Origin: Styela clava
Taxonomy: Eukaryota
Direction: 5' to 3'
DNA: 64,000 nucleotides
NCBI RefSeq assembly: GCF_964204865.1
Contig: NC_135254.1
Location: forward strand, 15,190,001 to 15,254,000
The notes beneath the pieces are model-generated. The model saw only the letters and a list, made by a program, of their open reading frames with translations, did no database searches and was not told where the DNA came from. This document shows positions 21,251 through 50,500 of the stretch, piece after piece. Position 1 is the stretch's first letter, and every line of letters starts with the position of its first letter. Both the position numbers and the translations under genes were made by a program.

Positions 21251-21982
21251 GTGATTTCAGTTGGTCTTTCTCATAATTATCGATAAGGGAGGGAATTTCA
21301 AACAATCCGTCTCAAAACTAATTTAGTCGTCGATGACGTAATCTGTGGTGTTTTGTCTACACTTCAATTGCTTCACCCAAATGGTAATCTGCAAACTGCC
21401 GGAGAAAATTGGATTATGACGTAATAATGAACGAATGCATGATGGAGTAACTCAAAGTGACTATGAGGACACCGAGTGCAATGATGCGTATCGGCCGCCA
21501 TTCTGGGTCCGGCGAAGCGCGGGTCCGCAACCAGGCTCAGTCTGTTTTGGCTTCGTCAGTCTACTGATCAGGTTTCGTTAGTCATTTAGTCTTTGATTTG
21601 TAACTGTTTTGGATTTCATTCTGGTGAGTTTAGTATTTTTCTTTTGCTGTTTGCCTAGTATAATAATAATTCTACCGTGCGGTTTCGTGAAAGCTGTGAT
21701 AGTATCTCATCTTAACCGCACTGCGTCTTGGGCACTGAGCTTCAAATACATATGGAGCAAACTTCTCTCTCGTTTTGTGTTGGGTTGCCTGTTTTTCGTA
21801 TACTCTTGTAGCGAAAGAGATAATGATTGAAGTAAGCAAACATAGTACGGTGCCTAGCAGTACGGTACCGTATTCGTAACAATATCTGTGTTTACTGGTT
21901 TATGGGATCTTTGCTGTTCAGATTTTGTTTCATTTAGTCTTTCTACATGTTGACATGCTGTAAAGGTATGAAGTTTAATGGT

Positions 21983-22320
21983 GCGGCGGTGTGGCTCATC
22001 GTGCTAAGCGTTAGGAATACGCTCGCCACCGCATCTCTGATTACCCTGCGAGGGTTCGCAGGTTCGAATCCCATGCGGGGTAGTTATGTGCGAGAGGATT
22101 GCTCGACTCCTCGCCGTCGTAGGGTGGTTTACGTAACCGCTGGTTGGTTACGGCTTCCTCCACCATCAAGTCTATGCTTCCGAAAAACAAATAACTAAAA
22201 CTAATCCCATACCCGACATGGACTGGTAACCGGACGAGAGGCCGTGGTTCGCCATATGGTTAAGTCGTCTTATCGGCTTTCCTCTCCCTCGGGATAAATA
22301 TGTAATTCATATCCTATCCT
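21983..22320 (+). mobile_element. tRNA-derived SINE, copy 1 (inside P1)
   Basis: Pol III A-box-like TGGCTCATCGTG and B-box GGTTCGAATCCC, a ~340 bp body and a short ATCCT-repeat tail. Highly similar to the copy at 31438. Confidence 0.85.
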
Positions 22321-22667
22321 AATGTGTGAATCCTACAGGATTAATGAGTTTGATTACTGAAAAATGGTAACTTGTACCCAGAATTTAAAAAAATAACAAA
22401 TGTCACATATTTTATGAGGTAATTTGTTTTCGAAAATCTTGCATTCTAAAATAAAGCTCACTGTAGAAATTATAGTAAGAGGTAGAGTAGTTCGTTGTTC
22501 TGAACTTGAAATTTTTCACAGATGGAAAGTGTACCTGTCTGTCTGTAGGTTCTGTTAGGTGTCATTTATATGCAATTGCTCTACAAATGATATTACAGTA
22601 TAAAATCATCTGTATCATAATCTTGCTAGCCTATGTGATGAGCAAGATTGTTTTTATTCAACAATTA

Positions 22668-25600
22668 TCAAAATTCCTTGCAGGTCGAAAAAGAAATCTT
22701 CATTATTTGTGAAGCAGGAGCGGAAAGGGAAATTGGACAATGTGCTCCATGGCCGCCCATACTCGCAGAACGTTGATTCGCCTACAAATTAATAAAAGAT
22801 TAAGGGTTTTCTTACAGCATTTAAAAACAGTAAAATGCCTTATCTGTCGGGTCGCGCAACCATGTAAAATCCATTGATGCCGCGATAAAGACCCTAGGAA
22901 GAAAAACTTGACTTCTTACTCTTTTTCTAATAAAGCACATCAATATGTGCACAAAGTCTTAAATGTCACACCCAAGCGTCATAAGAAGATGGTGCTAAAT
23001 TCTTCCAGCTGAGCCTGGTTTCACAAAATTTGCTTTTCATTTGATTCAGCTAAATGGCAATGTTTTTTCAATGTAGTGTACTTTTTAAAGTGAAGCTTTA
23101 CCATCGTTTAAGTCTTCCTATGTATTTGATTATGACTATGTCCATCGTATTTCAACGGGATGGCTAAAACCGAATGCCTAAATATTCAGAATTTGTTCAA
23201 AAATAGATTTTCAAATATAGAACATATTCTATACTGAAAATAACTTTAATTACAAAACTGCATTATTCTGTATGTATTTGCTTCAATCACATTTGAAATA
23301 GCGCAAAGATGAGGACCTTTGTTATCACATTTTTGCATGCGTTTGATGAACATTGCTTTGCCCTGCTTGATCGATGCCAAATGTACGTCTCAATCGACAA
23401 TTTGCGAATTTTGATTTTTCAAAATGTTGCTAATGGAACTAAATCATTATATTGAATATAACAAACTTCTAATATATTTGACTGTTGAGTTTTGGACATC
23501 TTGATATCAGGCTTCCATTCCATAAAGTGCTTATACTACAGTCAGAACCAGAGCATTCTGCTTGGTGGGCTTCATTTTTGGGCGGGTGTTTCCCAATTTA
23601 GGAGGTGGTAAATGTTTCGCTATTGCGATTAAAACTATTTGGAGCAGTAATGTGAAAGTGTGGAAATCATGTTTACTTGTTTTATATCAGTGGAAATCTC
23701 CGCCATGTCAAGAGTAAATATGCTTTAGTTAGTTCATGAGCAGTCGAACTCGGCCTAGTGTGGATCTCGTGCTTGAAAATGTAGTTGTTTAGGCGATTAC
23801 ACAGTACACACTATATATAAGTGGAAATAATTGTTTTTGACTGATCTCATAAAAACGCAATAACCTCCACGAGAGAGAAGTTCACCAAAGTCAAAACGGG
23901 ATCTTCAGATGATCCCGCAAAATGAGAGAGAATCGCATATTATTCCATATATATAGTGATAGCTCGGGGACTACAAAGACATATTATATTGTGATCTAGG
24001 CTTGCACGTAATTTACGGATTTACGGAATTACGTAATTATTTGGAGTTACGGAAGGGAAGTTACGAATTACGTAAAGTCGTAATTATTGCATTGAAACGA
24101 GCTTTCTTCAAAGCAGTCAATTTCGTCGATTGCGAAAAATGAAAGCTCAACAAGTAGAAGAGAGTTCCGGTATTCGCAGCCGTTTTTCTCTCTCTTGTTA
24201 CGTAGGTGAAGGAAGGCATGAAGCGTTGCCATTTACTAACCTATTATCAACTTATCTGGCATGGCCAATGTAAATTATTAACGTAGTTAAGGGGGAAGAA
24301 CTGAGTAGGGCCGTTTGACGCCAACACACCTGGTTTTAACTTCTCCCGCAACTTAACCGTAGATAAAGGATAGAATTGCGATGAGACTGATTGACGCCAA
24401 CACACCTGATTTCAACTTCTCTCGCATCTTATCTAGCATGGCCATGGCCAATGTACATAATAACCGTAGATAGGGGGAAGAATTGTGTTAAGACCAATGG
24501 ACGCTAACACGCCCGGTTTCAACTTCTTCGGGTGAAGTGACTAATGAACGCAGGGGATCAATCTATCAAACACGGTCTATCAAACATTTGTATCCATATT
24601 ACTTTTATTTATCATTTACTTGTTCCAGTTTTCCGTTACTTATGGTATATATGTTTCGTTTCTATGTTATAGTCACGCGTTTAAATAGTGGGAATTCCCC
24701 ACCAAGTGTGGATTAGCAATGCTTAACCATTCTTTATTGTTAATATCAACACTTGATATATGAACATGGAATATCATACTGTTTTTGGCTGTTTTATTTC
24801 AGACTTGGGGTATAAACAGGAAAATATCCATAACCTTTCAACACGACGAACTTGTGAAATTTAACGAAGAGCTTTCGCGACGAATTGGAACCAAATAAGC
24901 GAAAAGAGCGATTGATCACTCGCGCCAATTCCTCGCCGTGATAATTAATGTCGCGCGTATCAAATAGCAATATGACGACAAAAGAGAGATTGCGAAATGA
25001 ACCAACGCAACTTCGTCTTCTCGGCATCGGTAAAGCGATTGAGACGGCAGAGAAACAAAAAAACGACGGATTCCTCGCGGACCGCTAAAAATTTTAACTG
25101 CTATCAAATATGAGCCAGTGTGTTTATTCTGTGAGAGATCCATTTTCTATTACAAAATCTTGATGTTCTGTTAACGGTTTTATCGTTATATATCAGTCCG
25201 GACTTGGCCTTGCTCATGATGTTTTTCACAATTCTTCTCAATATTTCGGCCATATATGATTAACTGTCCCACCAAATGCGGCAACTTATTTTGGTTTATC
25301 GTCGACTTGAATACCACCGGCACTCGACCAAATTTGTGTCAATCTTGGCCGATAGGATCGCCGACTTGAGTTAGCAAATAAATGTCGTGAGTGTAAAATA
25401 AATGTCACAAAATGCATTGTTTTGCGATATAACTTTGTATTTTCGGAGAAGGCATATCATGTAAGTTCGGTATTTAAATTATACGCAAATAAATAATATT
25501 TGATCTAAATTTATCGCAAATAATGTTATAAACATTCAGTCCGCGAAATGATTAAATGTAAAATGAAGCATTGTAATCGGAATATCGTCAATAAGTCGAC

Positions 25601-26306
25601 ATCAATAATTATTATTATAAAATGCTAACAAGGCAGTAATGTCGGATAATGCAGAAGACGCTGCAAAAACAAGTCTTCGTCGCGAGGAAATCGCAAGTAT
25701 AATCAAACGAGAGAATACGCTCGTCGTTGGTTAATAAATTAGAAACCCGTAATTTTTATTCAGTACTAAGGTGGTTTTAAAAAACTATCGTTTTCATAAA
25801 TATCCGTATATCAGTGTCGGTAATGATAAAATAAAATTGATCGCATAAAAATGGGACGGTTAATTTGCGAAGGTGATAAAGGAAAACCAAAGCTAACACA
25901 AAAGATAAAAATCAGAATAAAATTAATTTGAATTCACCCCTTGATATTTGTATTTAACATTTGCCGCCGGCGTGTAGTACTGCCAAGAATATGAAAACCC
26001 AATTTCAATGTCCCATTCGGAAAAGATGTGGATTCAATTGGTTGTTATGATAGGTTTAAATGCGTGGAAAAATATCGCAATTACGGGGTCATTACGTAAT
26101 TGATTTTGCCGTAATTACGGAATTGATTTTTGTCAATTACGTGCAAGCCTATTGTGATCGGAACACATAAGATAGAGAAAGACAATAAAATGTGGCCAAA
26201 TACATGTACATGGAAAGTCGATTCCGGTTAGCCACTCTGGGTAATGTTCTGTGGCCGTAAATTTCCGCTTCCTACGGGTCGTTTCATTCACCTGGTCCTC
26301 ATTCAT
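22668..26306 (-). pseudogene. Second, divergently oriented spliced gene of P1 (unknown family, decayed)
   Basis: ATG at 26306 opens MNEDQVNETTRRKRKFTATEHYPEWLTGIDFPCT, followed by a GT donor (~26203). With the hAT insertion removed, a ~70 bp intron leads to a phase-compatible acceptor (exon starts 23970). Further exon-like segments follow: AILSHFAGSSEDPVLTLVNFSLVE, a 54-bp intron, CVLCNRLNNYIFKHEIHTRP..., LIAIAKHLPPPKLG... Stops and frameshifts are present; the 3' limit is approximate. Confidence 0.6.
23997..26151. mobile_element. Non-autonomous hAT element, 2155 bp, nested in P1
   Basis: TIR TAGGCTTGCACGTAATT / AATTACGTGCAAGCCTA. 8-bp TSD TTGTGATC at 23989-23996 and 26152-26159. TTACG subterminal repeats, plus three internal imperfect repeats GACGC(C/T)AACAC...AACTTCT at 24317-24530. 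Confidence 0.9.
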
Positions 26307-26402
26307 TTTGCCAATACTAGTTTTTATAACGCCTAAATTAATATAAACTTGTTCAGTCTAATTTTAATAGTACTGTACATAGATACCACGAAATAAATCA
26401 AG

Positions 26403-29400
26403 ATGGTAGGATGCTCAGCACTGAATTGTACCGGAAGATATGAGAAGGGAAAAAGAATGTTCAGGTTTCCAACAGATCTTTCCAGGCGAAAACGATGGTC
26501 AATCAACTGCCGTCGAGATAAATGGTTTCCATCCAAAAATGCTCGTCTGTGCCAGGTGACATTTATGACGTTTTAATCTTGTGTAACCTTTTCACATTTA
26601 TTTAGTTTATATTTCTCATTTAAACGTTACCTAGTCCCTAGTGCATTGTAATTGCCCTAATAAATGTTATAATGGTCGTGTTAACACATTTCACTCCTTT
26701 TTAGGATCATTTTGAGAAATCTCAGTTTGAAGGTCAAAGATTGGATGGCAATACCAAGTTGAAACCAAACGCGATTCCTACCCTATTTGATGTCCCAAAT
26801 TGTCCGAAACTATTAACAAGCCAGCGACGTGTTCTTAAGCGTGCAATGTTAACCGAGGCAAAAAAGATTTCGTGTTCAGGCAGTGAGTAATTTAACAAAA
26901 TTTATGTAGGTAATTTAGTTCTCTCATTAATATTTGTTACATTTCAAAATATTTATAGATATAGCCGAGGAGCATTGCTACTATAGAAAAATAGAAAACG
27001 TTAGCGATGTTCAGTGCAAAGTATTTGTTAAGAATAACGAGATGCTGGAAGATTCTAGGGAAGAAAACAATGAGTTAGATGGAGGAGATACATTAGAACA
27101 GGTTGATGGCGAATGTGTTCAATGCAGAGAGAAAGAACTAGAGATCCGACGCTTAAAAAGACAAGTATGCCCATGTTTTATAATCAGCTGGCAGTTCAAG
27201 AAACAGAACAGACTTATACGGGATATTGGCTACTCCCACCAGGATAACTGAGTCAGGAGTTCTTGAATCTCTAATTAGGTGTAGTTTTCGTGCTTTTAAA
27301 GTGCATAGTAAAAGAATAACATGGTATTCATATACATCACACAGAAAGATGTACATCTCCACATAAGAAGTAAAACTCTTATTAGAAATTTACTGGTTTA
27401 CCCTAATTCAGAATTGTGTTCATATGCGTCTAGATCCATCAGTTGAAGCAAAAAAATAGATAATGTGGAGTTGAGGGTTGGTAGTTTTTTAAACAAAGAT
27501 CAAATGGATGCAATGAAGAATTCATCGGGAAAGCCAGTTATTTGGGAAAATGAGACTGTTTCAACAGCGCTTAAAATTCGGTGTGCAAGGGTGAAATTAT
27601 GATATTTATATTTATACATAGCTGTCATTTTCTTCATACATATAAAGCAGTTTATTTTCTATGGTCTTTGAACTGGACTGTCTTCGAAAAATAATGCTAT
27701 ATCAGAATGGTTATATTGTTTAATTTTTTCTTTTGAAACAAAGGATAAAACTCGGTATTCGTTTTGCTTTTAGGTACAAATTCCTTTGCAGTCTCGGCTA
27801 TCCATTGCCATCTTACCGCACACTGTGTCGGCGCATTGTCAGTTTAGACTTTGCTCCAGGAATACAGCACACTGTGTTGGAATGGATGCAATAAAAAGGT
27901 GTAAATATGACTGCGACAGAAAAGCTATGTTTTTTGATGCTTGATGAAATTCAAATAGCCAAGGCAGTGGATTTTGATCCCGGACTGCATCGTCTTATCG
28001 GATACATTAGTTCCGAATTTTCGACAGCAAAGGAACCTGACGTAGCATCCCATATTATATGTTTCATGGTTAAAGGCATAACAACAAAGTGGAAGCAACT
28101 AATAGGTCAGTAGAAACATAAGATCTTTGTACAAATCCCCGCTCATAATGCAAAAACGGCTTCGTACCAAATATGCGAAATATTGACATAAAAAGAGGAT
28201 TTAATATTTATCGAGTAATTGAGTGTATGTGACAAAATAACATTTTGCTATTTTAGCATATTTTTATACCGGCATGTCCGTAGCCCCATATCAGCTGTGG
28301 GGGATGATTAAACAGATTATATGTCACCTTGGAGAATGCGAATACAAGGTTGTTAATGTGGTTAGTACCATGGCTTCATCCAACCAGGGTATGTGGAAAG
28401 AAGCGGGAGTGATTACAAACAGGTAGAAGTTTGATGTATGTTAGTATTGGCTAAAATGTTACAATATATGGTCATTCATATTTTACACTTATACAGGTTT
28501 CAGATTTCACCATGTGTTGTTCATCCTTCCTATTTTGCTAATGAAAATTTATATTTTATGGCCGATGTGCCTCATCTGCTAAAAAATTTGAGATCTGCTG
28601 TATTAAAATACGATGTGGAACTACCAAAATCAACAGTAGAAAAATATAATTTGCCAACTTCAGTGGTGAGTTTTACTACTTAGTTATCATATTATGTATG
28701 TTTTCGTATGTGATAATATAACACATTTCATTATTTATCTTAAGGTATCCTCAAAATTTTTCCATGCATTGGTGGAGTTGCAAGATGGAAAAGAACTGAA
28801 ACTAGCACCTAAACTTGCGAGAAAAAATGTTAATCCATCACACTACGAAAAAATGCGAGTGAACACCGCCTCGCAGGTAAGTAAATATTCATTCAATTTG
28901 TTAATGATGGGTGTTCGGTACAGCAGTTTCCATCGTTTTATATTTTGGCAGTTACTGAGCCACACCACTGCATCGGCATTGAGAACACTTGTCGCACACA
29001 AAGCTATGGATGAAAATGCTTTGACAACCGCCTTCTTTTGTGAATTCGTGAATAATTGGTTTGATATAACCAATTGTAGACATATGGGAGATGCTCTATT
29101 CGAAAATTCTGAAAAAAAGGTGGAACTCTTATCTGAGGTGAATATTTTTAATTCGGAAATAGTCTGGTTGCTGGGTATTTGGGACGCCGGTTTTTTCCTG
29201 TTGGTGTTTGATCAGAATACCTAATGCTAGTTTGGAGCTTTTTTTAGTAGTAAACAATAAGGCGACAAGGACAAAAAAGAAGTTTATTTGAATTTTTTGA
29301 AACCATGTTTCAGGCATTGAACGTTATACAAAGTATAAAATTCGTGGGGACTGGATGGAAACCTGTGCAGTCTGGCTTGCAATTGTCAACAACCTCAATG

Positions 29401-30297
29401 CTTATATACACAAAAAGTTTGTGATGAATGGAAAACTTATTTTTCTCATGGCAGGAAGGCTTACACAGGATGCCCTGGAAAATTTATTTTCACAAGTACT
29501 AATGAAATATAGGTTTTATTTTAAATGTTATTTCATTGTAAAAGAAGTTTGTAGTATATTTAATTACTTTTCAGGTTCGTGGCAAGGGAGTTCAGCACCC
29601 GAAACCAACGCAATTTCGTGTGGCTGTTAAACTTATATCAGTCTCACAATTCATGACCACTCCGACCACGACAAATTATGACAACGACGACACACCCCAT
29701 TTACTCGAATTCATCAAAACAAATTTAGAAAACCAGCAATTAGACCCTGAAAAAACAACAAGTGAGAACTCCAGTGCAATGGAGGTGTTACTTGGCGCTG
29801 CAACAGCTTCCTTTGACACCTGTGAAGCAGATGCTTTGTATTATTTAACTGGTTGGGCTGTGTACAAGGAAGTAAAAAAACAAGACTGTGAAATTTACAA
29901 AGATGCTTTTGTTACTATGGATATTGTCAATCCCGATGAATGCCCACAATCGCTATTAACTCTTTTTCGGTCTTACACACATGATAAAAATTTGAAAATT
30001 GATAGTTTTACCCAACATTTGTGCCACCCATCCAAAAAAGCAATCTTATTTTTGCGCGAAGTAGAAACAATATTCCGCGCCAATGTTAATGCTTTTTTAT
30101 AATATAAGTTCGCCAGTTACTTTTCTGACAGAGTTGATAGCTCTAAATTTGATTTTCCATCTTGCCGCAATGCCGCTTTCAAAATTTTGAAACGTTTTCT
30201 TAATATAAGATTAAATATACACGCAAAAGAAGTAACAAATAAAATTATTGAAAAACAGTTTGCAAGTAAAGCTGCAGCAAGAGCTCAAGTCAAATAA
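26403..30297 (+). pseudogene. THAP-domain P-element transposase (THAP9-like), ~11 exons, disrupted
   Basis: THAP C2CH finger MVGCSALNC...RFP...RW...LCQ|DHF...NAIPTLF. Catalytic-core motifs LMLDEIQI, MADVPHLLKNLR, YEKMRV, NNWFD and RLTQDALENLFSQ|VRG. In-frame stops (~27892, 30100), a frameshift near 29395, and the SDMG motif reads STMA. Confidence 0.9.
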
Positions 30298-31437
30298 ATT
30301 CGTTTATTATTTTGAACACTCCATATTATTAGAATATTTTGTTATCTTTTTTGATATATCGTCATCCTTCAATGCACGGAGTATATTTTTTACCTTTATT
30401 CCTCGGTTATACGCTGGTTTTATATTTCATTCAATACTCGGTAATATCTAGTAATAAAAAAATCCATTATTCGTTGCAAAATTTATATGGTAAAAGTTCT
30501 GTTTACGTAGTGGTGCTCGCACCATTTTTATAATAAATTGTGTTACTCTTTGTTTAATATTTTTGGGTCGAGTTATCTGAGAAAACATCTGCTGAGAATT
30601 CATTTCAGAATAATATTCATTCGTTTAGGTCCGAATTATAGACGGACGTTTTTTTTTGTTCAACTGTTTGACGATTTTTATTATATAGATATAATAGTTT
30701 GTTTGTAATCTTCATTAGACTCTATCAACTTTTGTAGTTGTTGTACGAGTCTCTAAATTGTATCTGCTGTAAATATTTTTGTGTTAGTGTTTGCATTGTC
30801 TGGTCTATAGTTTATTAGCCTTTCCTATACTTTGCTTTCCTCGCATTTTTATTAGTAAATATTCCGAGATAGTTACATATCCCTAGTTTTACTCTGTGTC
30901 ATAATATCAAATATTTCATATGTCGCAACTACTGTATATATTTGCATCAGCTGTGACTCGTTTGTAGGGTCTATGTATTTTATCCCTCATTTATGTTGCT
31001 CTTTATTTTAACCTGTAACAGCGCTGTAGGTGTCGCAGCTTGGAGACCTTTTCAGGTCGCTCGCGACTCCGGTTACACAAATAGTATAATTAGTACTGTA
31101 TATTTATTCATTGTATCAGTTTTATTTGAACTTGTTTCTGTGATGACAAATAAACAATTGATTGGTCGCAGCGTTAAATCACTTGGGGATCATATACAGC
31201 GATGGAAATTTGGACCCAAAATGGCGGGTGTGACGTCACACAAGCGCTTATAACGTTACCAATGCATGTCCTCACTTGGGTTATAGTCACTTTGGAGTAA
31301 CTGAAGACGCTCACGTGTCTTCGACGTAAATAAAGTATGCACGAATCATAATACAGTAATACCGGTATGTTTGATCGAAACATGATGAATCGTATCTTGC
31401 AGTTTATTTTCCCCTTAAAATAACCAAGGCGAGAAGA

Positions 31438-38187: not shown

Positions 38188-39715
38188 GAAAATAATAGAA
38201 GCCACCAGGAATCCGCAGACGTTTGAATGCGGGTAGTGAGTTTCCAGTAGCGTTGTGGTTCGAAACTGATTTTGGAAATATTGCACAACCACCCCGCGAT
38301 TTTTCGTTTCAATTCAGAAAGCACACACATGAACTTAATAACGAAAGGTACAATAATTTGAAATATTAAAGCGTAGGCTCGACTTGTAAACAGGAGCCTA
38401 TTGAGGCGCAAATGTTTGTAGGCACTTGGACTATTTTCAAAACATATCATGCTAAGTAGTCATAATTTAGCACTCGATCAGTAATGAATATTGAAAATAC
38501 CTTATTCAATTTTAAAATTAGATGACACGGAACATTCCTAATAATAATATTTTTTGTATATAGGACACCAAAGTTTAGATTCGTAGGGCATCTAAAGGCC
38601 GCGATCCGGCCCTGTTTGGCCAAAGCTCGAATATCTCCTTCATGACTTAATACAAAAATGAATTACAATACAATCGAATTTTTTTAATTTCTGATTGTAT
38701 TCTGTAACGCTCGTTAGCTCTCGCTTACCCTTTCTGTCAATGCTATCCAAATTTGGCTGACCCTCTTCTGTTAGCTTCTTTTTATTTCTCCTTGCTGACT
38801 CTTTGCCTCTGCAAAGAGATGTCAAAGACTTATCTTGACAAGATAAGTGATCTAATGATCAAGCTATGACTGCGATCCATAAATAATTCGATTCTCATAT
38901 CTTACACTGTTCAAATTGATAATGATACCCCATTATAACTAAACGTACTTAAATATAACTTCACAATCCTTTAAAACTTTTGTGGTAACGTAAAATGCTC
39001 AAATTCAACAGCTCTTGTTAACAGAATCTAGCTGCCCCACTTCTCTGTCTATCAGGAGGACTTTCGCACGTATGGAAATTGAATCGCTGAGTCACTTTGG
39101 CTGTTCCGCGATTTTCTCACATATTTTGAATTGTTTATAACCAGGGTATACATTACTACATTCTCTTTTTCGTTTCTAAAATTTGGTTTTATCGTGATAG
39201 AATGATATGATATAAACCCATCCAAAATAAGTTATTTATAATATAACTTTCAATATTCCATCCCATATTAATATCACTAATTTCTATAGATTTAATTAAG
39301 CGATGAACCTAATCCTACCCCCTGAACTGGGGTCAGTGGACTCAGAAAACACTTCAATTACCACCATAAGTAGTGTCGGTATTTGTCTGTATGTCTGTTA
39401 GATGAACGCGATATCTCAAGAAGGCGAGGTTGAATCTGCTCCAAATTGCATGTGCATTCATCATATCTCGGACCATAAGCTTATTGATTTTGGATGAATT
39501 ATGTCGTATAATTAACGAGTTACTAATTAATTAGTGATGGGACACGCGGTGTCACTATAGAGTCATGGATCTCAAAGTCCTTATATACCTAAGTTGCGCA
39601 ACAATGGAAATTGGCCGCCATTTTCGATCATAATCGCTACGTCGTCTTTCGTGCGTACCGGCGGTTCTGTCTGTTGTACCTGATTCGCGTTCAGGCTGCT
39701 ACTGTGTGCTGTAAA

Positions 39716-42700
39716 ATGACAGGCTGTTCAGCGCCCAACTGTAATGGAAATAGCCAAAAAGGTTGGTTATTCAAGTTTCCGGTAGATAACGAAAGAAGAA
39801 AAAAATGGGAGGTTAATTGCCGGCGGGGTGGGGGATGGAAGCAGAACTTTCAATGGTGCCTTAGTGTTTAATAAAATATTACTAGCTGGTCTGACTACTT
39901 AGACTGTTCGCTTATTTTATTTTTCAAGTTTAACTTTAACCTTCTTCATTAATGTTTGTAGGTTTGCTGCTTTTGGTTAATAGTTTACGTGTTTTAACTT
40001 GAAACCATTCTAATCTTTAAATTAGAAACGAACTCTTAACGAGTCATAAAACACGTAACAAGTCCTGCAGGCTGTAATAACGATAACGCCTCATGCCCTG
40101 ATGATACCAATACCAGCTTAAAAGCGACCATTCTTTAGGAGAAAAAGGAGAACTTGAACAATGTACAATCAACGAACTCGTTCTTGCCCCTTGCAGTGAA
40201 ACTTTAATTTTGTTTGGCTTATCAGCCAGCCATGATTTGAACCTGTTCATTTTATGCGTGAAAATATATCATATCATTACATGTATACGGAGATATGTAT
40301 ATACAATGTCAACGTCAGATCAGAGCAACAGAATTAGACAACAACATAAGTACCAAATTATGTTTTCTAAAAAATGGTATCTCCGACAGACGTACTAGCG
40401 CATTTTTAAGATGAAGTCAGATCAATCGTACGAAAGGTGACTCCCAAAGACATCAACTGCACAAGCAAGCCCATGATAAAAAGATCAAGGAAAAACCAAA
40501 AACAACAACTCGATATCAACCAAAAATCAGCGATGAATCCATGAATAAAAGCGAAGAGCCAAAGACTATGACAAAAAGAAAAAGACTGTTATGTTAAAAA
40601 AAATGTGTAAAACATTCATATTATTGGAACTATGGACTGTTATAAAAAAAATGTGTGTAAAAAAAATCATACTATATGAACTGTTTTTCATACCGAAAAA
40701 GAGACTGTAAAATTGAAAACTAGTCAGGAATCTTGACTCCAAAAACGAATGAGAAAGATATGAAATGAAAGAACTCCAGAAAGAATCGCCCGCGAATCAA
40801 CTTCAAGAAACCGCGCGGTTATAGCATTTTATATCGTATTATAATTATTTAAATTTCGTTTACAAAATGGACAGACATTCTTCTTCTTCACAGGTATTCC
40901 ATACTTCTTTTTTCTAATCTTTAAGGCGTTCTATATTTGGTTCTGAACCCAACGAGGTTTACTCAAAAATACTTAATTTATTTGGTTATGACAGATATTA
41001 GCATTCGTTTTCTTCAAATATACTTCACGTTGAAGTTAACATTTTAAGATTTTAAAATGATCGTATTTCGAACTAGCTCATTACTGATGTATTTGCATAA
41101 ACGCAATCCTCATTTTTATTTTTTAAACGACCAAAGGGGCTCATCACAATTACAGCCGGAAAGGCTCATCAACGCAACACGCATATTTTTATTTATTATT
41201 TTTCAGCGCTTCAAAATTATTAATGTGAAACGAACTGTATTAGAGATAACTATTTGTAGTAATTTGTCACCTAAATTTAAAATAAACTAATGCCAAATCT
41301 TTTTCTTTCCAGACACTGTTTAACACACACAAACTCTGTCTCATACTCATGATTTCAACTTTCTTATATTTTTAAGAATTTTGTTACATGCGTGTATTTT
41401 TTCACTGCACGCTCAAGCTTGGCCACTGCTCCGCAGTTATAGTAGGTGCATTGTATCGGATATTGGTTAAATTAGCTGCTTTTGGTTAATAGTTTACGTG
41501 TTTCAACTTAAAATCATTCTAATCTTAAAATTAGAAACGAACTCTTAATCATAAAACACGTAACACGTCTTGTAGGCTGTAATGACGATAACAATGGACA
41601 AGTAACTAACGAACTCGTGCGTGCAGTGCAACTTGGTATTTTGTCTGGCTTATCAATCATGACTGGGAACTGTCCTTTGTATTTGTAAATATATACAATT
41701 GCAATACATGTATTCGGAACCATAAGTACAAGATCAGAACAACAGAATCAGCTAGCAACTACTATTATATTTCCTAAACTATCTGTAAAAAATCATCACA
41801 CATCAGGATTAGGGTTAGATGATTTAGTTGTGGTCTCTAGACTCTATGGTTGGGGTGGAGAATCTCCACTGGATTGATTCTATTTTTATAATATAAAAGG
41901 ATTCTATTACTGTAAGCAGTGCTTAGGAATTCAAGTGTATACTGAAATAGAGTACGTTTGAGCCTGAGTACGTATCATTTGTTGTAGAACACCAAGACGA
42001 AATATAATGTTGAAAAAATGGGATGCATAGCGCTCAATATTTCAGAACTACGTTTACTGTATATAATTTACTCCATTTTCAGACTCATTTCGGAGAATGT
42101 CAATTTGAACTGAGAAGGAAAGATAATTGGAAAAAACTGAAATGGAATGCGATACCAACATTATTTAATGTGCCAAATGCACCAAGAAAATTAAAGTCAT
42201 CAAGACGTGACTTGACCAAAATATTAAATGAGGCAAGAAGTGTCGATAAAGAACAAAACAATAAGTTGTGAACTCCGAAATGATCTCTGTTTAAGAGTTT
42301 GAGCGCCATAAAAATAATTTCATCAACGTATAAGGTTTGAGTGAGCACTCCTACGCTAAATGCCACCAGGACGAACCAGTTGTGTCCGAAACATTTAATT
42401 TTGAGGCATATACAGATACAGAACAGGATTGTAAGAACTGTGCAAGCTTGAAGAACGAAGTCTGGAGTTTAAAATATCAGGTATAATTTATATTTGTTAA
42501 TCACGAGAATAATAAGTCTCCATACAATCAAGTTATCAACGTCTCAATGCTTTAAGATCGCGCAAGTCGAGCAAAAAATTTCAAATATGGAGCGAAATCT
42601 CAAGTCCTGTTTCAATGAGGACCAAATTGACGCATTGCAACGAACATTCGCGTCGAAGGGAAACAAATGGGCGAATGAAACCGTGATGACTGCTTTAAAA

Positions 42701-45371
42701 GTTAGATGTGCTCCTGGTGTGAAAGGGTATGTGTCCTGTTTCATTTAATCTTCAGATTGAGGTGTGATGAAAAATTTCCAAACCTATTCAATGAATTAAC
42801 AAGCATGTTTAAAATGCATCACTTCTACTTTAATAATATCATTGCAGCCTTCGATTCTATACTTATATTTCGGATATATATCCTTAATTTATTTTTAGTT
42901 ACAATTTCATTCGAAGTTTGGGCTACCCGTTGCCATCGAGTAGAACACTTTGCAATCGTGTGGTTAATTTAAAACTTGCCCTGGGGATTCAGCATACTAT
43001 AGTATTCTGGATTGGATGAAGATAAAAATGGACGGTTTCTCACCGCGTGAACGACTTTGTACTCTTCTACTGGATGAAGTACAAATAGGTTATGCTGTGG
43101 AGTACGATCCGTCTCTGAATATGATCGTTGGCTACATCAGTAGCGAGTTTGCAACTGGCCAGACAACAACAATGGCGTCGCATGTTCTTTGTTTTATGGT
43201 TAAAGGCGTCACGACGAAATGCAAACAGTTAATTGGTAATGTGTGACTTTATCATCAATATCACGTTGCACTTCTAATATATTTAAATAAACAATTTTGC
43301 ACAAACTTTTTTAGCATATTTTTATACGGGATCATCCAGTAACACAAAAGCTTGTGTTGGAAATGGGGAAACGAGGTTTTATTGTATGTTGCATAGTCAG
43401 TGATATGGGGCCCTCCAATAAGGCTATGTGGCGATCTGCGGGTGTGTCATGCTACAGGTATATTTACTGAAATTGAAATGCTCTTATTTTATAGGTATGG
43501 GACAATCTGAAAATATAAAGAAACTGTCTATATTTACAGGACGGGAGTTAACTGCAAAATTAGACATCCCTACGACGAGAACTTCAACTTGCATTTCATG
43601 GCCGACGTTCCTCATTTATTAAAAAATATAAGGACTGCGTTTTCGAACCATATTATTTCGTTACCTGACGCCACGGTTCGACGCTATGCACTCTCAACAG
43701 CTTCAGTGAGTAAATCAATTGGAAATTCCACCAAAAATTTCTAAACACAACAATGTATAAATAATTTTATGATTGCCTTATTTCTATACATTCCAATGAA
43801 GTTTTTGACCTATATTTGCATTGGAATCTTTGCAGGTTGATTCATCCTTTGTGAAAAGGCTGGTTGCATATCAAGGCACAAAAGAGATGAAGTTAGCCCC
43901 GAAGCTTACGAAAGGACATGTGTTCCCTTCTACATATGAGAAAATGCGCGTTAATATGGCGTGTCAGGTAGAATTTGTCTACAATTTCTCCCATTAAACT
44001 CAATTATTTTATGCTGCCACGGAGTTTTTTTTTATCTGTAGTTCATGATATTCAGAATTTGGATGGCAAATCACTGTTTTGTTATAAATAGGTGATGAGC
44101 CACACAGTCGCTACAGCACTAAGATCACTCGTAGCGGCTGGTGTTTTTTCAAATCATGCGCGGACAACAGCGTTTTTGCTACAGCTTGTGAACAACTGGT
44201 TCGACCTGATGAATTGTCGTCATACAGGCACGACACTTTATGCAGATTCAGATAGCAAGTTGGAGAAAACTAATGAGGTGATTTTAAATACTTTAATCTT
44301 TTGAAAGAACAAAAATTCGAGCCACTCTGCAGCAAAGAGATAAACATTTATCTTTCATCATTTGTTAGGCCTTGTTTGTACTTCAAAACATCGCTTTTCC
44401 TGATAATGTTTTTGAACCTGTGATGAGAGGAATTAAGTTGTCCACAACTGCTTTGCTATCACTTCACCAAGAGTTGGTTGTTAATGGAGAATTAGATTAT
44501 ATATTGAGCGGTCGCTTCACCCAAGATGCTCTTGAAAATTTGTTTTCACAGGTGGGTTTTAATAATAATAATAATAAATTTCTAATACAATCACAAGTAA
44601 GCGACCGAAGATGATATACCACCAGGCATAAACGCAATATTGTTATTCAGGTCAGAGGTTTCGGAAATTCCCATCCTTCTCCGATTCATTTTAGAAATGT
44701 TTTGAAGCTCGTGATAGTGGGACAATTTATGGATGTGCCGACGTCGTCCAACTATGATGTTGACGATACACCTCATTTACTAAGCTTCGTTAAGGATCAT
44801 TTACCATCTGTGAAAAAAGAAAACGGTGAAGGCATATCTCCTGACCCTTTCGATACACTCGTTGGTGCCGCCACTCCCTTGTTAGATTTTATCGAGGGAA
44901 ATGGGTTATATTATTTAATTGGGTGGGGTATCCACAAGGAACTTCCTAAAGAATGTGCCTTGATTTATGAGTGCTTTTGTTACATTAGACATAAACATAA
45001 TCACACAAAAGACAGAAGCAATACTTTCGCTATTTAAATCCCACAACTCCAATCAGAATCTGACCACTGACAACCTAACCGCTCATCTTTGCCATCCAAC
45101 TCCATTAATTTTTGAACATTTTGTTCGAGTAGAATGTATTTTCCGATCGATTATCGAAAGTGTCAAAGAACTTTCCAACATCGAAAACGTTGTTTTGTCC
45201 TCGTTACCACCACCTCCAGCTAATATTCCAGAATGCCATACTACGGCAGAAAATTGTGTAAAGCGATTCATCAAAGCGAGGCTTAGGATCCATGCACGAC
45301 ACATAACCGCAGTTGCATCTGTTAAGCAATTTGGGAGCAGAACGGCAGCGAGAATTACTAATATTAAGTGA
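39716..45371 (+). pseudogene. THAP-domain P-element transposase of element A, intron-rich, disrupted
   Basis: MTGCSAPNC...FKFP...KW; THF...WNAIPTLF (42083); LLLDEVQI; SDMGPSN; MADVPHLLKNIR; YEKMRV; NNWFD; RFTQDALENLFSQ|VRG. Frameshifts or deletions occur in several exons (e.g. end of exon 1, ~44960). Confidence 0.88.
39965..41750. repeat. Diverged direct repeats inside the first intron of transposase A
   Basis: GCTGCTTTTGGTTAATAGTTTACGTGTTT...TTAGAAACGAACTCTTAA...CATAAAACACGTAACA...AACGAACTCGT...GGCTTATCA...AGATCAGA occurs at ~39966-40330 and again at ~41475-41750. Confidence 0.75.
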
Positions 45372-46762
45372 TTATTAAAAGTATACTGTTATTATTTACT
45401 CACATATATATATTTATTCAAATTACCTAATAGTGTACTATTACACTTCATCATTCGAGCATTTTAGAAGTAGCAAATTGTTAGATCCATTGGGAAAATA
45501 TAGTAATTGTAACTTATGACTGGTTGTAATTCTGTCACGAATGATAAATTTCTGCTATTGAATCATATTCAGAATTTCACATCATTTTATGTGGTAATTC
45601 CATTTTGCTATAATACTACTTTGTTGTGCGTACTTAGTTAAACATATTTCCGAATGTCCCATTCATGACATTCGTTTCTGTGATTTACCGTACATTATAT
45701 CCTTAATTTGTGACAAAGAAATTTAAAGGGAAACTGCGTTTTAATCTTTTCATCGGTGTCTCTGCTGCACCTTTTTCCTGGGTTATTGCGTACCTTATTT
45801 TATTTTAATCACAAAGTATTGACTCTGACTTTCTATGACTAGATCATATATATTATCTTTGTTTTTAATTTGTATTAGCTAATACACTCCTCGAATATTT
45901 CGTTTTCTTTTCGCCAATAGACTCGCCATAGTATTTGTTGTTGGCCAGAACAAATAAAACTTTAGTTTTATGTCCTGCGTTTTATTGTAATTTTATCTCA
46001 CGTCGGATACACTATCATCACATTATATGAATCTGGGAAAATAAGGATTCTCTACAAAAATTTGTCTCCACTAAATAGACTAATGGCATGATATGAGTAA
46101 ACTCCCCTCCCTTCGATTTTGTTGTCATTATAGTGAAAACGTTTACCTGTTCAAGCTAGTTTTCCTAATCTTGAACCCGATAATCGATAGCAATGAAGGT
46201 AGGAGCTGACTTAGAGAACCGTGAGGTAGTAATACACCATTTTGTTTGTACCAGGAATTTTTTTTTTTTGTTGCTCCATTTTTTGTTGTTGTTACGATGA
46301 CTATGTTCTGGGTTGACGAAATAAATTCTCTTTCTCTCATTTATTTCAATCGTTAAAATACTACAACCTAGATCGGGTAGATGAGTGATATTCAGCAATA
46401 CTTAATTTTATACCTGTTCGCGACTACATGAGTTTTAATAGATGGACGGGGTGATAATAATTTTAACAACAACGTCAGAAGGGGGTGGGCGGAGTCTTAT
46501 GGGTTGTATATATGATATTTTGTTTGTTACCGGGAGGGTTGCATCTGGCACGTTAATGTAATTGGGTTCTATGCCGATTAGGACGTCCTGACGGAATCCC
46601 ACACTGCCGAAAGAAAATTACCGCTCCAAAACCGCCCCAAGATCCATCAAAAACCATTGAAACTAGGCTTGATCGCGTTACACTACCCATGCCGAATGAT
46701 CGAAAATGGCGTCCATATGACGCCATAATGGGACAAGTTAGTTGCACGGGGTTGATGGATCT

Positions 46763-49700
46763 CAAAGCCCATATTTACCTAAGTTGCGCAACAATGGAAA
46801 TTGGCCGCCATTTTCGATCAACATCGCCTGCGAGATTACGGCGGTTCTGCGTGGTCCGCGGCTAGACTGGTGCCTTCTGCTATAGAATTAAAGGCCGTTC
46901 GGCTCTTAATTGCAGCGGGAATAGCAAAACAGTGCAACTATTCAAGCTATCATCAGAAGCAGAGAAGGAGGAAATGGGAAAATAATTGTAGGCGACGTAA
47001 AGGCTGGAAATCTGGCCCAGGCAGTTCCTTGTGTGAGGTTAGTCAAACGAATGGCCTAATGTCGAACTAACACCAGGAAAGATAGGTTGTACACAGTTTT
47101 AGGATGATGTCATATTTAATTATTTATGTCACGTTGCCGATTCGACTCATTTAAGTTAGCTCTGACCCCAGGAAAGTTGAGAGTTAAATTAGTGAGATTT
47201 TCTAAAATAAACGCTGGCTTCAGGTGTCAGGTTAGGGAAACTGTTTTCAAATCTTCCTAAGTAATGCAAAGTCAGAACATTGCATTGAATGTATCAGATT
47301 CATTGTCACGATTGTTTAAAGCACTGCGGTAACAAAAATTTATAGTAATTAGCAGCATTATGAGTAGACAATTCGGAGCTTAGTGGAAATAATGAATTTC
47401 TGAACTGAATGCGTGTTTCGTTAAGTCACTGTCAATTATATTTTGTGTTAAAAATGGGATTCGAAAATACGTTCATTGTGTAACCTACAACTCATTCCTT
47501 TTTCAGACTCATTTTTGAAGAATACCAATTTGATCCGAAGAGTACGGATAAATGGAAAAAATCTAAATAAAAGGGGATGACAATATTCGATGTGCCAAAT
47601 CCACCAAATTATTCAAATCATCAAGACCTGAATTAACTAAAATATTGACTGAGATGAAGTTTCAAAAAATAACAATAGCCCTACAGTGAGTTGTGAATGC
47701 TAAAATTTTTACTATTGAGAAATTCAGGATTTCAAGACCACCATCTTGTAGACTCTACAACAGTGGTTCTTAAAGTATGGGTCGCGACCCAAACATGGGT
47801 CGCGGAAGGTTTAAAAATGGGTCGCGACAAGGTCGTCAATGCAAGGGCAATCTAAGAGGAGAAGGAAGATATTACAGCTTTCCCAATGTTTCAATTTAGC
47901 TTCTAAACTCTGGTATTTAAAAATAATGAAATATAAAATTTCATTCACGGAAAGAACTGTCTTGAGCTCATTGTTACATCACAATTCTGATATGCTAGTC
48001 ACGTGTATTATTTTTATGGTATCGGTAACCATGCACGTCGCTTGTCGTTGTGTTGACCGCGTGGAATGTCGTATTAGTGGATTAAAAAAACCAAAAATGG
48101 GTGTCTTTTTGGTAATGTAAATTGTAATAGACGACGCAATGAAAAAGCTCGCTTCTCGACATTAGATTATTCAATATCTAGGGAAAATGTGACTTCATCT
48201 CGAGGCACTATTTACCGCGAACGAAGCAGTGTGTGCACATTTGATGAGTAAAAAGTTGTATATTGCGAGAGATACCGAAGGCCAGCTAGGATGTCGTGTT
48301 TGCGACGGACAGCGGACGCCTTTTCTGCTACAATTCGCGACAAGGCACTTGTGCGAGCGAGGATATTTGGCACTGACGGTTATCAAAACTAAGCTCGCAA
48401 TCGCCTCGATACCCGTGACAACTTGCGTATTGCGTTAAGTAAAATAGAGCTGTGTATTGAAGATATAATGAAAAGGAAATTTCAGTTTCATCAATCTCAC
48501 TGAGTCAATGGACTGTTTCTAATAAATAGTTGTCTGTATTTGAGTCAAACTGTACTAACATTAAAAACACATTTTGCGTTATTTAGGATTGGGTCGCGAG
48601 TATTCATAAAACTCAAATTTGGGTCGCGCTCGAAAAAGTTTAAGAACCACTGCTCTACAAGGTGGTGGTCTTGAAATCCTGAATTTTTCAATAATAAATG
48701 TAAATAAATACAATGTAGAGCATGGCTCGAAACATCAAAATATTGAAAAAAGATAGTCCTAAGTTCCAATATGATGGGCATGAGAAATTAAATGTCCGAA
48801 AACTTACATCCCTAAAAATTTGTTCAGTGCAACTTAGGCCTAAGTCACCTTGTTTTACCTTTCATCCCATACAAAAAATTTCAGAAATTGTTGAGAAGAG
48901 AATGGGCCAAAAAGCTTTATAGGGATAAAAAGCAGGGAGGAATTGAAGCTGAAGTGGCAAAAATATTGTTTACAAAGATATTCTCATGCACATCAAAATA
49001 ACCAGAGCTCAGGTCTTTACTAAGTGTGAATATCTAGCTAGATATTCAAAAATGGAAAAAATCCAAATTGTTTTGTGCGTTTTTCTCAAAATTGTGGTTG
49101 TGGCTATTTTATTGATGACTGTATTTTTTGGTTGACAAAATAATAAAATATTTCTCTCATTGTACTACCATGTGTAAGGACGTTTACAATTCAGTTATGC
49201 AGCTGGAGCCTGGAGTGTATAAAAAGAGCGAATTTCTAATGTAACATTGACATCAATATTTAGCTACAGTCCCATTTGACGTCGCCTTCACTGTCGAAAA
49301 ATTTAGTTCGTTTTAGGCCTGTTGTACTGTGAAACTGTGTGTGTCTACTATCCTAATGGGAAAATCAACATGGATGTTTTGTTGCGCCATCAGGACGCCT
49401 TGGTTGTCAGCAAATTCTGGGACGCCAGACGTCAAATCCGGGATTGTCCCGGCCATTACCGGGACGGTTGGTAGCTCTAGCATAATCAGGTCTCGAAGAG
49501 TTTTAGATTTTGCCTACTTTCCCGTAGGCTATATGTGTGTGTGTTGACTTGCATTGCCTATATATTTGTTTTAGTGTTACGGAAAATCGAAATAAACTTT
49601 ACTTTACTAACCGTGCGTTGCGTCTATATTATGTTTGTTGCCGTGCCCCGTATCGGGTTCGATACTGATTGAGACATCCTATCGGATTTCTGCGCCCTCG

Positions 49701-49845
49701 GAATATAACTACTGATTTAAATCTGCCCCAATAGCCTTTTAAAACTACTAAAATTAGGCTTGTTTGCGTTACACTACTCGAGCCGAATGATCGAAAATGG
49801 CGTCCATATGACGCCATAATGGGACAAGTTAGTTGCACGGGGTTG
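46763..49845 (+). mobile_element. P-superfamily transposon B (3083 bp), internally deleted, second unit of the tandem dimer
   Basis: Termini nearly identical to element A (CAAAGCCC.../...CACGGGGTTG). Flanked by ATGGATCT at 46755-46762 and 49846-49853. Retains only degenerate THAP exons (SALNCSGNS...KWENNCRRRKGWK...LCE; exon-2 remnant at ~47507). Confidence 0.88.
47761..48652 (+). mobile_element. Non-autonomous hAT of Buster/Charlie type, 892 bp, nested in element B
   Basis: TIR CAGTGGTTCTTAA / TTAAGAACCACTG. 8-bp TSD CTCTACAA (47753-47760, 48653-48660) fits NNNTANNN. GGGTCGCG subterminal repeats. C-terminal transposase remnant LLQFATRHLCERGYLALTVIKTK...LRIALS...FHQSH*. Confidence 0.92.
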
Positions 49846-50233
49846 ATGGATCTAAACCGCAGTTTCGATCGATAAGTCTTCGGTCTCCGACAGATATTCT
49901 CGTTTATTCATTCAACGGGTCACAACATTTCACCATACATTCACTTAATTCAGTTTTATTTTCCCATCACTTTTTCTCCATCCCTATAACACAATTTTTG
50001 ACTGTGGCATTTTCTCGAGGGAAACAAGACTGGTAGTTTAGTTAAGCTTTGTTAGGCTTGGGTACCGTTAATTTTAGAAAAAGGACACTAAAATATTGGG
50101 ATGAATTCGCGCGAGTGTTAAAATTGTTATTTGAATAACGTTTCTCCCTATTTAACTTATCTATTGAATAAAATGTCATCTACTCCCAAGTGTAAGATTT
50201 TTTAACAGTGGGGTTGATCGTTCGTTAAAGGTA

Positions 50234-50500
50234 TTATTACTTAATCGATCTTGATCGGTAAGTATGTTGATAGGTATTTGCCTGTTTGTCTGTTAGATAG
50301 ACGCGATATCTCACGAAATCGAGGTTTAATCTGCTCCAAAATTTGCACGTGCATTCATTATATCTTGGACCAAAAGCCTGTTGATTTTGGATGAATTATG
50401 TCGTATAATTAGCGAGTTATCAATTAATTAGTGATGTGACACGCGGTGTCGCTATTGAGTCAGAGCGCAGTATACACACCGCTAGATCGATGGCGATCTC
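50234..50500 (+). mobile_element. HINE/DINE-1-like repeat copy (3'-truncated)
   Basis: TTACTTAATCGATCTTGATCGGTAAGTA 5' end, GTCT repeat, and the same core as the 39380 and 55330 copies. Confidence 0.7.

What the first reader, a model, noticed from the sequence alone, without database searches (positions are those of the whole stretch)
39565..49853. Head-to-tail heterodimer of two different P-type elements sharing one target site (three copies of the TSD)
Seen: ATGGATCT-[A, 7182 bp]-ATGGATCT-[B, 3083 bp]-ATGGATCT. A and B have near-identical terminal ~55-70 bp but clearly diverged THAP exons and right arms, so B is not a simple duplicate of A. Removing the dimer and two TSD copies rejoins the two halves of a HINE repeat. 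Known: P elements can form tandem dimers by repeated insertion into the same target, leaving a TSD at the junction. Inference: two distinct subfamilies hit the identical 8-bp site in the same orientation. This implies strong target-site preference or end-directed homing, possibly targeting the abundant HINE repeat.
Basis: partly seen in the sequence, partly recalled or inferred. Interest (0 to 1): 0.8.

Follow-up and report, generated by a model that had tools for sequence, protein, structure and literature searches.

The report
Two P transposons in one target site
Two different jumping genes of the P type sit head to tail in exactly the same 8-letter target site of a sea-squirt genome, which is a clean chordate example of the "double insertion" already described for P elements in fruit flies, not a new kind of element.

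Summary
ATGGATCT occurs at 39565, 46755 and 49846. It brackets element A (7182 bp) and element B (3083 bp), which lie in the same orientation. Removing both elements plus two copies of the 8-mer restores one copy of a ~255-bp interspersed repeat.

A carries the exons of a P/THAP9-type transposase (THAP, RNase H-like, GTP-binding insertion domains). B is a non-coding relative. B's arms are 90-96% identical to at least 9 dispersed copies, each with its own 8-bp duplication. A has two dispersed relatives. So B is not a local duplicate of A.

The best reading is two successive integrations into the same 8 bp. This is known for Drosophila P elements (McGurk & Barbash 2018).

The family prefers a palindromic site: T at -2, R-T at duplication positions 1-2, and the mirror image. 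The element termini CAA/TTG restore the outer bases of this site, as Linheiro & Bergman (2008) described.

The idea that the ~255-bp repeat is the target is not supported. None of the other 22 independent insertions checked against it lies in it, and this is the family's only dimer.

Short-read evidence across the junction was inconclusive. The scan's notes showed no earlier dimer report. Verdict: a new member of a known kind, of modest interest.

The parts
39378..39564 (+).
   Evidence: 92-95% identity to many genomic copies, 2821 first-look candidates. Aligned to intact copies.
39565..39572 (+). Target-site duplication, copy 1 (ATGGATCT)
39573..46754 (+). Element A: 7182-bp autonomous-type P/THAP9-like transposon
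   Evidence: Termini shared with about 49 genomic right ends. Two dispersed relatives, at C1:16291816-16302124 and C18:11662166-11668934, with their own TSDs.
39612..39630 (+). Left subterminal inverted repeat of A (TGGCCGCCATTTTCGATCA, 40-58 nt from the end)
   Evidence: Only the first 3 nt (CAA/TTG) are inverted at the very ends.
39725..39868 (+). THAP domain, first exon of A's transposase gene
   Evidence: Pfam PF05485 E=9.8e-6, profile positions 1-46
39963..41592 (+). ~1.6-kb repeat inside A's first intron, also present in the C1 relative, so ancestral to the A family
   Evidence: ~80% identity to many genomic copies. The C1 copy shares it.
42074..42166 (+). THAP domain, second exon (C-terminal part)
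   Evidence: PF05485 profile positions 57-87, E=0.023, below the cut-off on its own
42968..43467 (+). Exons for the RNase H-like catalytic domain, N-terminal part
   Evidence: PF21787 E=6.8e-13 (42968-43243) and a weak continuation, E=0.06 (43315-43467). Weak match to Drosophila P transposase 6p5a, E=0.14.
43809..44301 (+). Exons for the GTP-binding insertion domain
   Evidence: PF21788 E=3.3e-4 (profile 23-66) and E=6.2e-5 (profile 67-111), collinear
44369..45368 (+). Open frames for the C-terminal part of the transposase
   Evidence: Only a weak match to P transposase residues 492-537, E=0.16. 61% aa identity over 31 residues to the neighbouring P element at 21453-31294. Assignment inferred.
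46628..46754 (+). Right terminus of A (87% identical to B's; last 64 bp identical; subterminal repeat at 46697-46715)
46755..46762 (+). Target-site duplication, copy 2, at the A/B junction
46763..49845 (+). Element B: 3083-bp non-autonomous member of a dispersed subfamily
   Evidence: Arms 90-96% identical to at least 9 dispersed copies with their own TSDs. Decayed THAP exon at 46801-47070, no Pfam hit.
47708..48698 (.). MITE nested in B (45-nt inverted ends), private to this copy
   Evidence: 97-98% identity to abundant genomic copies, 968 first-look candidates. Inverted arms. Absent from the other B-family copies.
49846..49853 (+). Target-site duplication, copy 3
49854..49912 (+). Right part of the interrupted ~255-bp repeat

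Best explanation
This is a tandem heterodimer made by double insertion. One element of a P-type (THAP9-like, cut-and-paste) family integrated into ATGGATCT inside a ~255-bp interspersed repeat and duplicated the 8 bp. Later, or in the same burst of activity, a second element of the same family but a different subfamily integrated with its 8-bp staggered cuts on exactly one of the two duplicated copies, in the same orientation. That leaves TSD-A-TSD-B-TSD. A encodes the transposase type. B is a non-coding relative with the same termini and the same subterminal 19-nt inverted repeat, so it is presumably moved in trans. The site can be reused because a duplication copy keeps the 8 bp. The element termini (CAA at the left end, TTG at the right end) also put back the preferred T at -2 / A at +2 of the family's palindromic target motif. 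Shown: the anatomy, the family relations, the 8-bp duplications, the motif and its restoration. Inferred: the order of events (unknown), trans-mobilisation, and any attraction by the resident element.
For: Three identical 8-mers lie exactly at the boundaries. The empty site is reconstituted on intact repeat copies. A has THAP, RNase H-like and GTP-binding insertion domain exons in P-transposase order. 15 of 15 other copies have matching 8-bp TSDs, all different from each other. B's arms are 90-96% identical to at least 9 dispersed copies, and A is 90-97% identical to two dispersed copies. A and B share only their termini plus 187 bp at 75%. Terminal sequence variants (CAAAGTCC.. and CAAAGCCC..) occur in both subfamilies, which fits one shared transposase. 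Target motif from 38 half-sites: T at -2 in 28/38, T at TSD position 2 in 26/38, G or A at position 1 in 28/38. The dimer's site was left out of the training set. It scores 3.71, in the top 1.2% of window positions. It stays at 3.21 or 4.53 once a resident end replaces one flank. [quoted passage not shown] The three terminal nucleotides of the P element restore the 14-bp target motif, which allows re-insertion at an occupied site (PMC2577343).
Against: Only one such dimer exists in this family, so no statistics on mechanism are possible. The site is an ordinary member of the motif, not an outstanding one. By my own rough arithmetic, a top-1% site means millions of equally good positions in 377 Mb. 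With roughly 25-50 fixed insertions, the chance of any coincidence from the motif alone is about 3e-4. Some extra local factor is therefore needed and has not been identified. The junction was not confirmed by independent reads.
Confidence: 0.8

Rival explanations
1. Resident-end-directed integration (homing). Transposase bound to the end of the element already in place recruits the incoming transpososome. Strand transfer then hits the very bond at the resident end/TSD junction. The coincidence would be caused by the first element, not by the quality of the site. This is a refinement of double insertion, not an alternative origin.
For: More than 2800 candidate copies of the same repeat carry nearly the same site, yet none of the 22 other independent insertions checked lies in one. 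The site is only typical for the motif, so the motif alone makes a coincidence very unlikely. P elements are known for local hopping (PMC7776569). Integration into a TSD copy uses the same phosphodiester that transposase cleaves at the resident 3' end (my inference from the staggered-cut geometry).
Against: There is a single case. No second dimer and no inverted dimer of the family was found. If ends attracted insertions strongly, more would be expected among about 49 copies. The Drosophila data favour motif quality as the driver (PMC5932611).
Confidence: 0.25
2. Assembly artefact. One haplotype has A at the site and the other has B, and the assembler strung both together.
For: Ascidian genomes are highly heterozygous (general knowledge). 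My read check did not show reads bridging the junction. At 46775 all laid reads and contigs of runs X3 and X9 carry the family-consensus A, not the T of this B copy.
Against: The two paths would share only 8 bp at the join (A's right end and B's left end are not homologous), which is far too little for an overlap or graph join. No flanking sequence is duplicated. The laid data were short unitigs and about 5x Hi-C reads from other samples, swamped by about 49 family copies, so their silence says little. Even if true, two elements would still have hit the same 8 bp.
Confidence: 0.05
3. Recombination or gap-repair product. B first replaced A at the site by P-type 'targeted replacement' (double-strand-break repair copying an ectopic element). 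An A/B heterozygote then produced the dimer by an unequal exchange or template switch.
For: A and B share termini (65 and 127 bp) long enough to prime repair synthesis. Replacement of one P element by another at the same site and orientation is known in Drosophila (my recollection of the literature, not checked here).
Against: The final join would need an exchange within 8 bp of homology. Repair from an ectopic donor would bring the donor's flank into the junction, not the local TSD. It needs more steps than a second integration.
Confidence: 0.07
4. Local duplication of one ancient element, followed by divergence, with the termini homogenised by gene conversion.
For: The termini are much more alike than the interiors.
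Against: B's interior arms are 90-96% identical to at least 9 dispersed copies, and A's interior is 90-97% identical to two dispersed copies. A and B interiors are essentially unalignable with each other. Conserved termini with free interiors is the normal pattern for autonomous/non-autonomous pairs.
Confidence: 0.01

Closest known systems
Tandem P-element dimers formed by double insertion in Drosophila melanogaster (McGurk & Barbash 2018, Genome Res 28:714, PMC5932611)
   Same: Head-to-tail P elements are separated by exactly one 8-bp copy of the target-site duplication, explained by two integrations at one site.
   Different: Here the two partners are clearly different subfamilies (7.2-kb transposase-coding and 3.1-kb non-coding). 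The host is an ascidian, and the structure is old enough to have a nested MITE. It is in a reference assembly and was not inferred from junction reads. In flies, dimer junctions match the preferred motif better than single sites do; this site is only average for its family.
Palindromic target-site model with motif restoration by P termini (Linheiro & Bergman 2008, NAR 36:6199, PMC2577343); the singed-weak double P insertion cited there
   Same: The family has a palindromic preference that extends beyond the 8-bp duplication. The terminal 3 nt of the element restore the outer motif positions, so an occupied site stays a target.
   Different: The motif letters differ (T at -2, R-T...A-Y, A at +2; termini CAA/TTG instead of CAT/ATG). 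The singed-weak pair is described there as inverted, whereas this pair is direct.
P elements / THAP9-like transposons of chordates (Ciona P elements, Kimbacher et al. 2009; zebrafish Pdre; both cited in PMC7776569)
   Same: THAP plus RNase H-like transposase with a GTP-binding insertion domain, 8-bp TSDs, and subterminal inverted repeats.
   Different: No long terminal inverted repeat: only 3 nt at the tips plus a 19-nt subterminal repeat at 40-58 nt. I did not compare the sequence with the published Ciona elements.
Bacterial IS tandem dimers with a target duplication between the copies (cited in PMC5932611)
   Same: Two transposon copies in tandem with the duplicated target between them.
   Different: Different transposase families and hosts. 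Many IS dimers are reactive intermediates, and nothing suggests that here.

Membership tests
P superfamily of DNA transposons (P/THAP9-like) | 8-bp target-site duplication | tested here: met
   15 of 15 other family copies have matching 8-bp direct repeats at both ends (12 perfect, 3 with one mismatch), as does this locus.
P superfamily of DNA transposons (P/THAP9-like) | N-terminal THAP DNA-binding domain in the transposase | tested here: met
   PF05485 E=9.8e-6, 26.7 bits against a cut-off of 23.9, in A's first exon. The second exon continues the profile at positions 57-87.
P superfamily of DNA transposons (P/THAP9-like) | RNase H-like catalytic domain interrupted by a GTP-binding insertion domain | tested here: met
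   PF21787 E=6.8e-13 is followed by two collinear PF21788 pieces (E=3.3e-4 and 6.2e-5). Each piece is just under the cut-off because the domain is split over exons. The exons were searched singly; the joined protein was not built.
P superfamily of DNA transposons (P/THAP9-like) | Terminal inverted repeats (31 bp in Drosophila P, 13 bp in zebrafish Pdre) plus subterminal repeats | tested here: inconclusive
   Only CAA/TTG are inverted at the tips. A 19-nt inverted repeat sits 40-58 nt from each end in both A and B. The subterminal repeat is present; a long TIR is not.
P superfamily of DNA transposons (P/THAP9-like) | Intact catalytic acidic residues / active transposase | not tested
This needs the spliced protein.
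TE tandem dimer by double insertion (sensu McGurk & Barbash 2018) | The junction between the two elements holds exactly one TSD-length copy of the target, identical to the outer duplications | tested here: met
   ATGGATCT occurs three times at 39565, 46755 and 49846, with complete element ends on both sides of the junction.
TE tandem dimer by double insertion (sensu McGurk & Barbash 2018) | The two units are separate insertion events, not a duplication of one | tested here: met
   A and B belong to different subfamilies, each with dispersed relatives.
TE tandem dimer by double insertion (sensu McGurk & Barbash 2018) | The structure exists in the DNA of an individual (reads span the junction) | tested here: inconclusive
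   The output showed no bridging record. The data were k-mer unitigs and low-depth Hi-C reads of other samples.
Site-specific transposon targeting a host repeat (like R1/R2 in rDNA) | Most copies lie at the same position of the same repeat | tested here: not met
   None of the 22 other independent insertion sites whose flanks were compared lies in the ~255-bp repeat. The 24 other TSDs are all different.

The most novel reading that the evidence does not exclude
The resident P element itself directs the second integration. Transposase assembled on the resident end would offer the end/TSD junction bond as the target for an incoming element. That would be a homing mechanism in a chordate P family, one that builds tandem arrays at otherwise ordinary sites and could seed satellite-like arrays.
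Probability: 0.2. Interest if true: 0.5.

Novelty: new member of a known kind. Interest (0 to 1): 0.27.

Why it matters
It shows that double insertion of P elements, so far documented from junction reads in fly populations, also left a fixed or at least assembled trace in a chordate genome. In this case the two partners can be told apart, which rules out simple duplication. It also shows that restoration of the target motif by the element's own terminal nucleotides, described for Drosophila P, holds in a distant P family with different termini. That supports the mechanism as a general property of the superfamily. Beyond that it is a single locus of no evident consequence for the host.

Tried and rejected
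- **Other dimers.** L023 (C10:2665866) and L024 (C19:6835113) have CAAAG 8 bp after a right end, but nothing beyond matches a left terminus, so I take them as chance. L024's CAAAGCCCATGT could be an excision footprint; I did not pursue it.
- **Inverted dimers.** None were found. The first two patterns were too long for the tool and were shortened.
- **HINE targeting.** Rejected.
- **8-mer-only motif.** This made the site look poor (score 0.15). Extending the motif to the flanks showed it is a typical site, so I dropped the argument that this is a bad site.
- **Read support.** One read-laying run on 45500-50400 with four runs gave no decisive record at the junction.
- I stopped that step and recomputed the same table from the stored loci by coordinates.
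- **Two insertions in one repeat.** The right ends of two family copies appear to lie 5 bp apart in one young repeat (L025, L032). This looks more like truncated copies of that repeat landing beside the P ends, so I did not use it as evidence of targeting.
- **Spliced transposase.** It was not joined. The exons were searched singly.
Full report
**Observation**

The 8-mer ATGGATCT lies on the + strand at 39565, 46755 and 49846. Between the copies lie A (39573-46754, 7182 bp) and B (46763-49845, 3083 bp). Both start with CAAAG and end with GCACGGGGTTG.

A and B align only over three stretches:
- the first 65 bp, at 92%;
- the last 127 bp, at 87%, with the final 64 bp identical;
- 187 bp at 75% around the second THAP exon.

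The window has no N.

**The flanks**

The sequence left of the first 8-mer (about 39378-39564) and right of the last one (49854 to about 49912) are two parts of one ~255-bp interspersed repeat. First-look candidates number 2821 for the left part and 1695 for the right part. On intact copies the two parts overlap by exactly the 8-mer, for example at G000:C9:3756480-3756743, which has one ATGGATCA.

**What A and B are**

*Element A.* A carries, in collinear order on the + strand, open frames that match:
- THAP (PF05485, E=9.8e-6; the second exon continues the profile);
- the TNP-like RNase H N-terminal domain (PF21787, E=6.8e-13);
- the GTP-binding insertion domain (PF21788, two collinear pieces, E=3.3e-4 and 6.2e-5).

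There are also weak matches to the solved Drosophila P transposase 6p5a (E=0.14 and 0.16). I searched the exons singly. The joined protein was not built, so I cannot say whether the gene is intact.

*Element B.* B has only a decayed THAP-like frame and no Pfam hit.

*Ends.* The element ends are real. 15 other copies in the genome have the same termini, flanked by their own matching 8-bp direct repeats, all different from one another. There is no long terminal inverted repeat. Only CAA/TTG at the tips are inverted, plus a 19-nt inverted repeat (TGGCCGCCATTTTCGATCA) 40-58 nt from each end in both A and B.

By these features the family belongs to the P superfamily. I did not verify the species.

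**Family structure**

The right terminus has about 49 candidate matches in the 377-Mb assembly. After collapsing copies that share a flank, 24 independent insertion sites remain besides this locus.

A has two relatives:
- C1:16291816-16302124, about 90% identical;
- C18:11662166-11668934, 90-97% identical, with an internal deletion.

B's left arm (1-942) and right arm (from about 1890-2340 to 3083) are 90-96% and 85-94% identical to at least 9 dispersed copies of about 3-4.7 kb.

The middle of B is a ~990-bp MITE (47708-48698, 45-nt inverted ends). It is 97-98% identical to abundant genomic copies, and the other B-family copies lack it.

The two left-terminus variants, CAAAGTCC.. and CAAAGCCC.., occur in both subfamilies. 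This fits mobilisation by one transposase type. It also refutes the idea that B is an old local duplicate of A with homogenised ends.

**Is the dimer special in the genome?**

- A pattern for right end + 8 + CAAAG, with up to 2 mismatches, finds this locus and two others. In those two nothing beyond CAAAG(C) resembles a left terminus.
- Patterns for tail-to-tail and head-to-head pairs find nothing.

This is the only dimer of the family in the assembly.

**Target choice**

None of the 22 other independent sites whose 300-bp right flank I compared with the ~255-bp repeat lies in it.

From 38 half-sites, with the dimer's own site left out, the family shows a palindromic preference:
- T at -2 in 28/38;
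- G or A at duplication position 1 in 28/38;
- T at position 2 in 26/38;
- the mirror image on the other side.

This resembles the staggered-cut palindromic model for Drosophila P (PMC2577343).

With the 8-mer alone the dimer's site looked poor. With the flanks included it scores 3.71, within the range of the 15 fully known sites (1.3-7.7) and in the top 1.2% of window positions.

Once one flank is replaced by a resident element end, the score stays at 3.21 (A first) or 4.53 (B first). The termini TTG and CAA supply the preferred T at -2 and A at +2. This is the property that Linheiro & Bergman described for the Drosophila P element: its terminal three nucleotides "complement and restore" the target motif, allowing further insertions at an occupied site.

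**Mechanism**

Three identical copies of the target, with complete ends on both sides of the junction, are the signature of two integrations into the same 8 bp. A second integration with its staggered cuts on one duplication copy gives TSD-A-TSD-B-TSD.

The alternatives do not give this signature:
- Repair synthesis from an ectopic donor would bring donor flank into the junction.
- Unequal exchange between allelic A and B would need a crossover within 8 bp.

McGurk & Barbash (PMC5932611) found the same junction structure for most tandem P elements in fly populations and drew the same conclusion.

The order of the two events cannot be read from the sequence.

Motif quality alone does not explain the coincidence. 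By my own rough arithmetic, a top-1% site has millions of equals in the genome. With roughly 25-50 fixed insertions, the chance of any coincidence is of the order of 3e-4. Thousands of near-identical sites in other copies of the same repeat are unoccupied. Some local factor is therefore likely. It could be local hopping (PMC7776569), open chromatin, one burst of activity, or attraction by the resident element's transposase-bound end. One case cannot tell which.

**Reads**

I laid 45500-50400 (4901 letters, within the operators' limit) on four runs.
- Run X3 (same species label, Logan unitigs) holds A's unique right arm with a few differences, at depth about 30. Its unitigs break at the family-shared termini.
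- Run X9 (Hi-C raw reads of another sample, about 5x read) has almost no depth on unique A sequence or on the unique right flank.
- At 46775 every laid read or contig carries the family-consensus A, not this copy's T.

No record bridging the junction was among those shown, and much of the output was cut. This neither confirms nor refutes the assembly.

An artefact is unlikely on structural grounds. The two haplotype paths would overlap by 8 bp only, and no flank is duplicated.

**Verdict**

The reading as a double hit by two subfamilies is supported. Targeting of the host repeat is not. The phenomenon and its likely enabling mechanism are already described for Drosophila P elements. This is a clean chordate heterodimer example of modest interest.

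Noticed in passing
G000:C5 2.67-4.72 Mb (e.g. L038, L039, L043-L046, L056-L058): At least 14 copies of this P family on the same chromosome share one flank (TSD CGTAAAAG followed by TACGGTGCTTGCC...). One insertion was evidently carried along in a large dispersed segmental amplification over about 2 Mb.
   Followed up: partly
window 47708-48698: A young ~990-bp MITE with 45-nt inverted ends (97-98% identical to abundant genomic copies, 968 first-look candidates) replaces the ~1.4-kb middle part that other B-family copies carry. It is private to this B copy.
   Followed up: partly
L025 (G000:C1:8575774) and L032 (G000:C19:9224392): The right ends of two family copies abut the same very young repeat (at least 1264 candidates, 99% alike) at points 5 bp apart. 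Intact copies of that repeat start about 57 bp further upstream, and the other flank of the one P copy I checked (L032) is not that repeat. It looks like 5'-truncated copies of the repeat landing at P ends.
   Followed up: partly
window 21453-31294: The neighbouring P element, 8 kb upstream, is a different P family (47-61% aa identity in the THAP, RNase H and GTP-binding pieces). It also begins with CAAAG and has a GGCCGCCATT subterminal motif.
   Followed up: partly
L024 (G000:C19:6835113-6835143): A family right end is followed by 8 bp and then CAAAGCCCATGT, 11 of 12 matching a left terminus, and after that by unrelated sequence. This is possibly the footprint of an excised second element, or chance.
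   Followed up: partly
G000:C10:2789812-2791497 and G000:C14:16752999-16753873: The ~255-bp interspersed repeat also occurs as short tandem runs (copies about 280-340 bp apart), so it is not purely dispersed.
   Followed up: no
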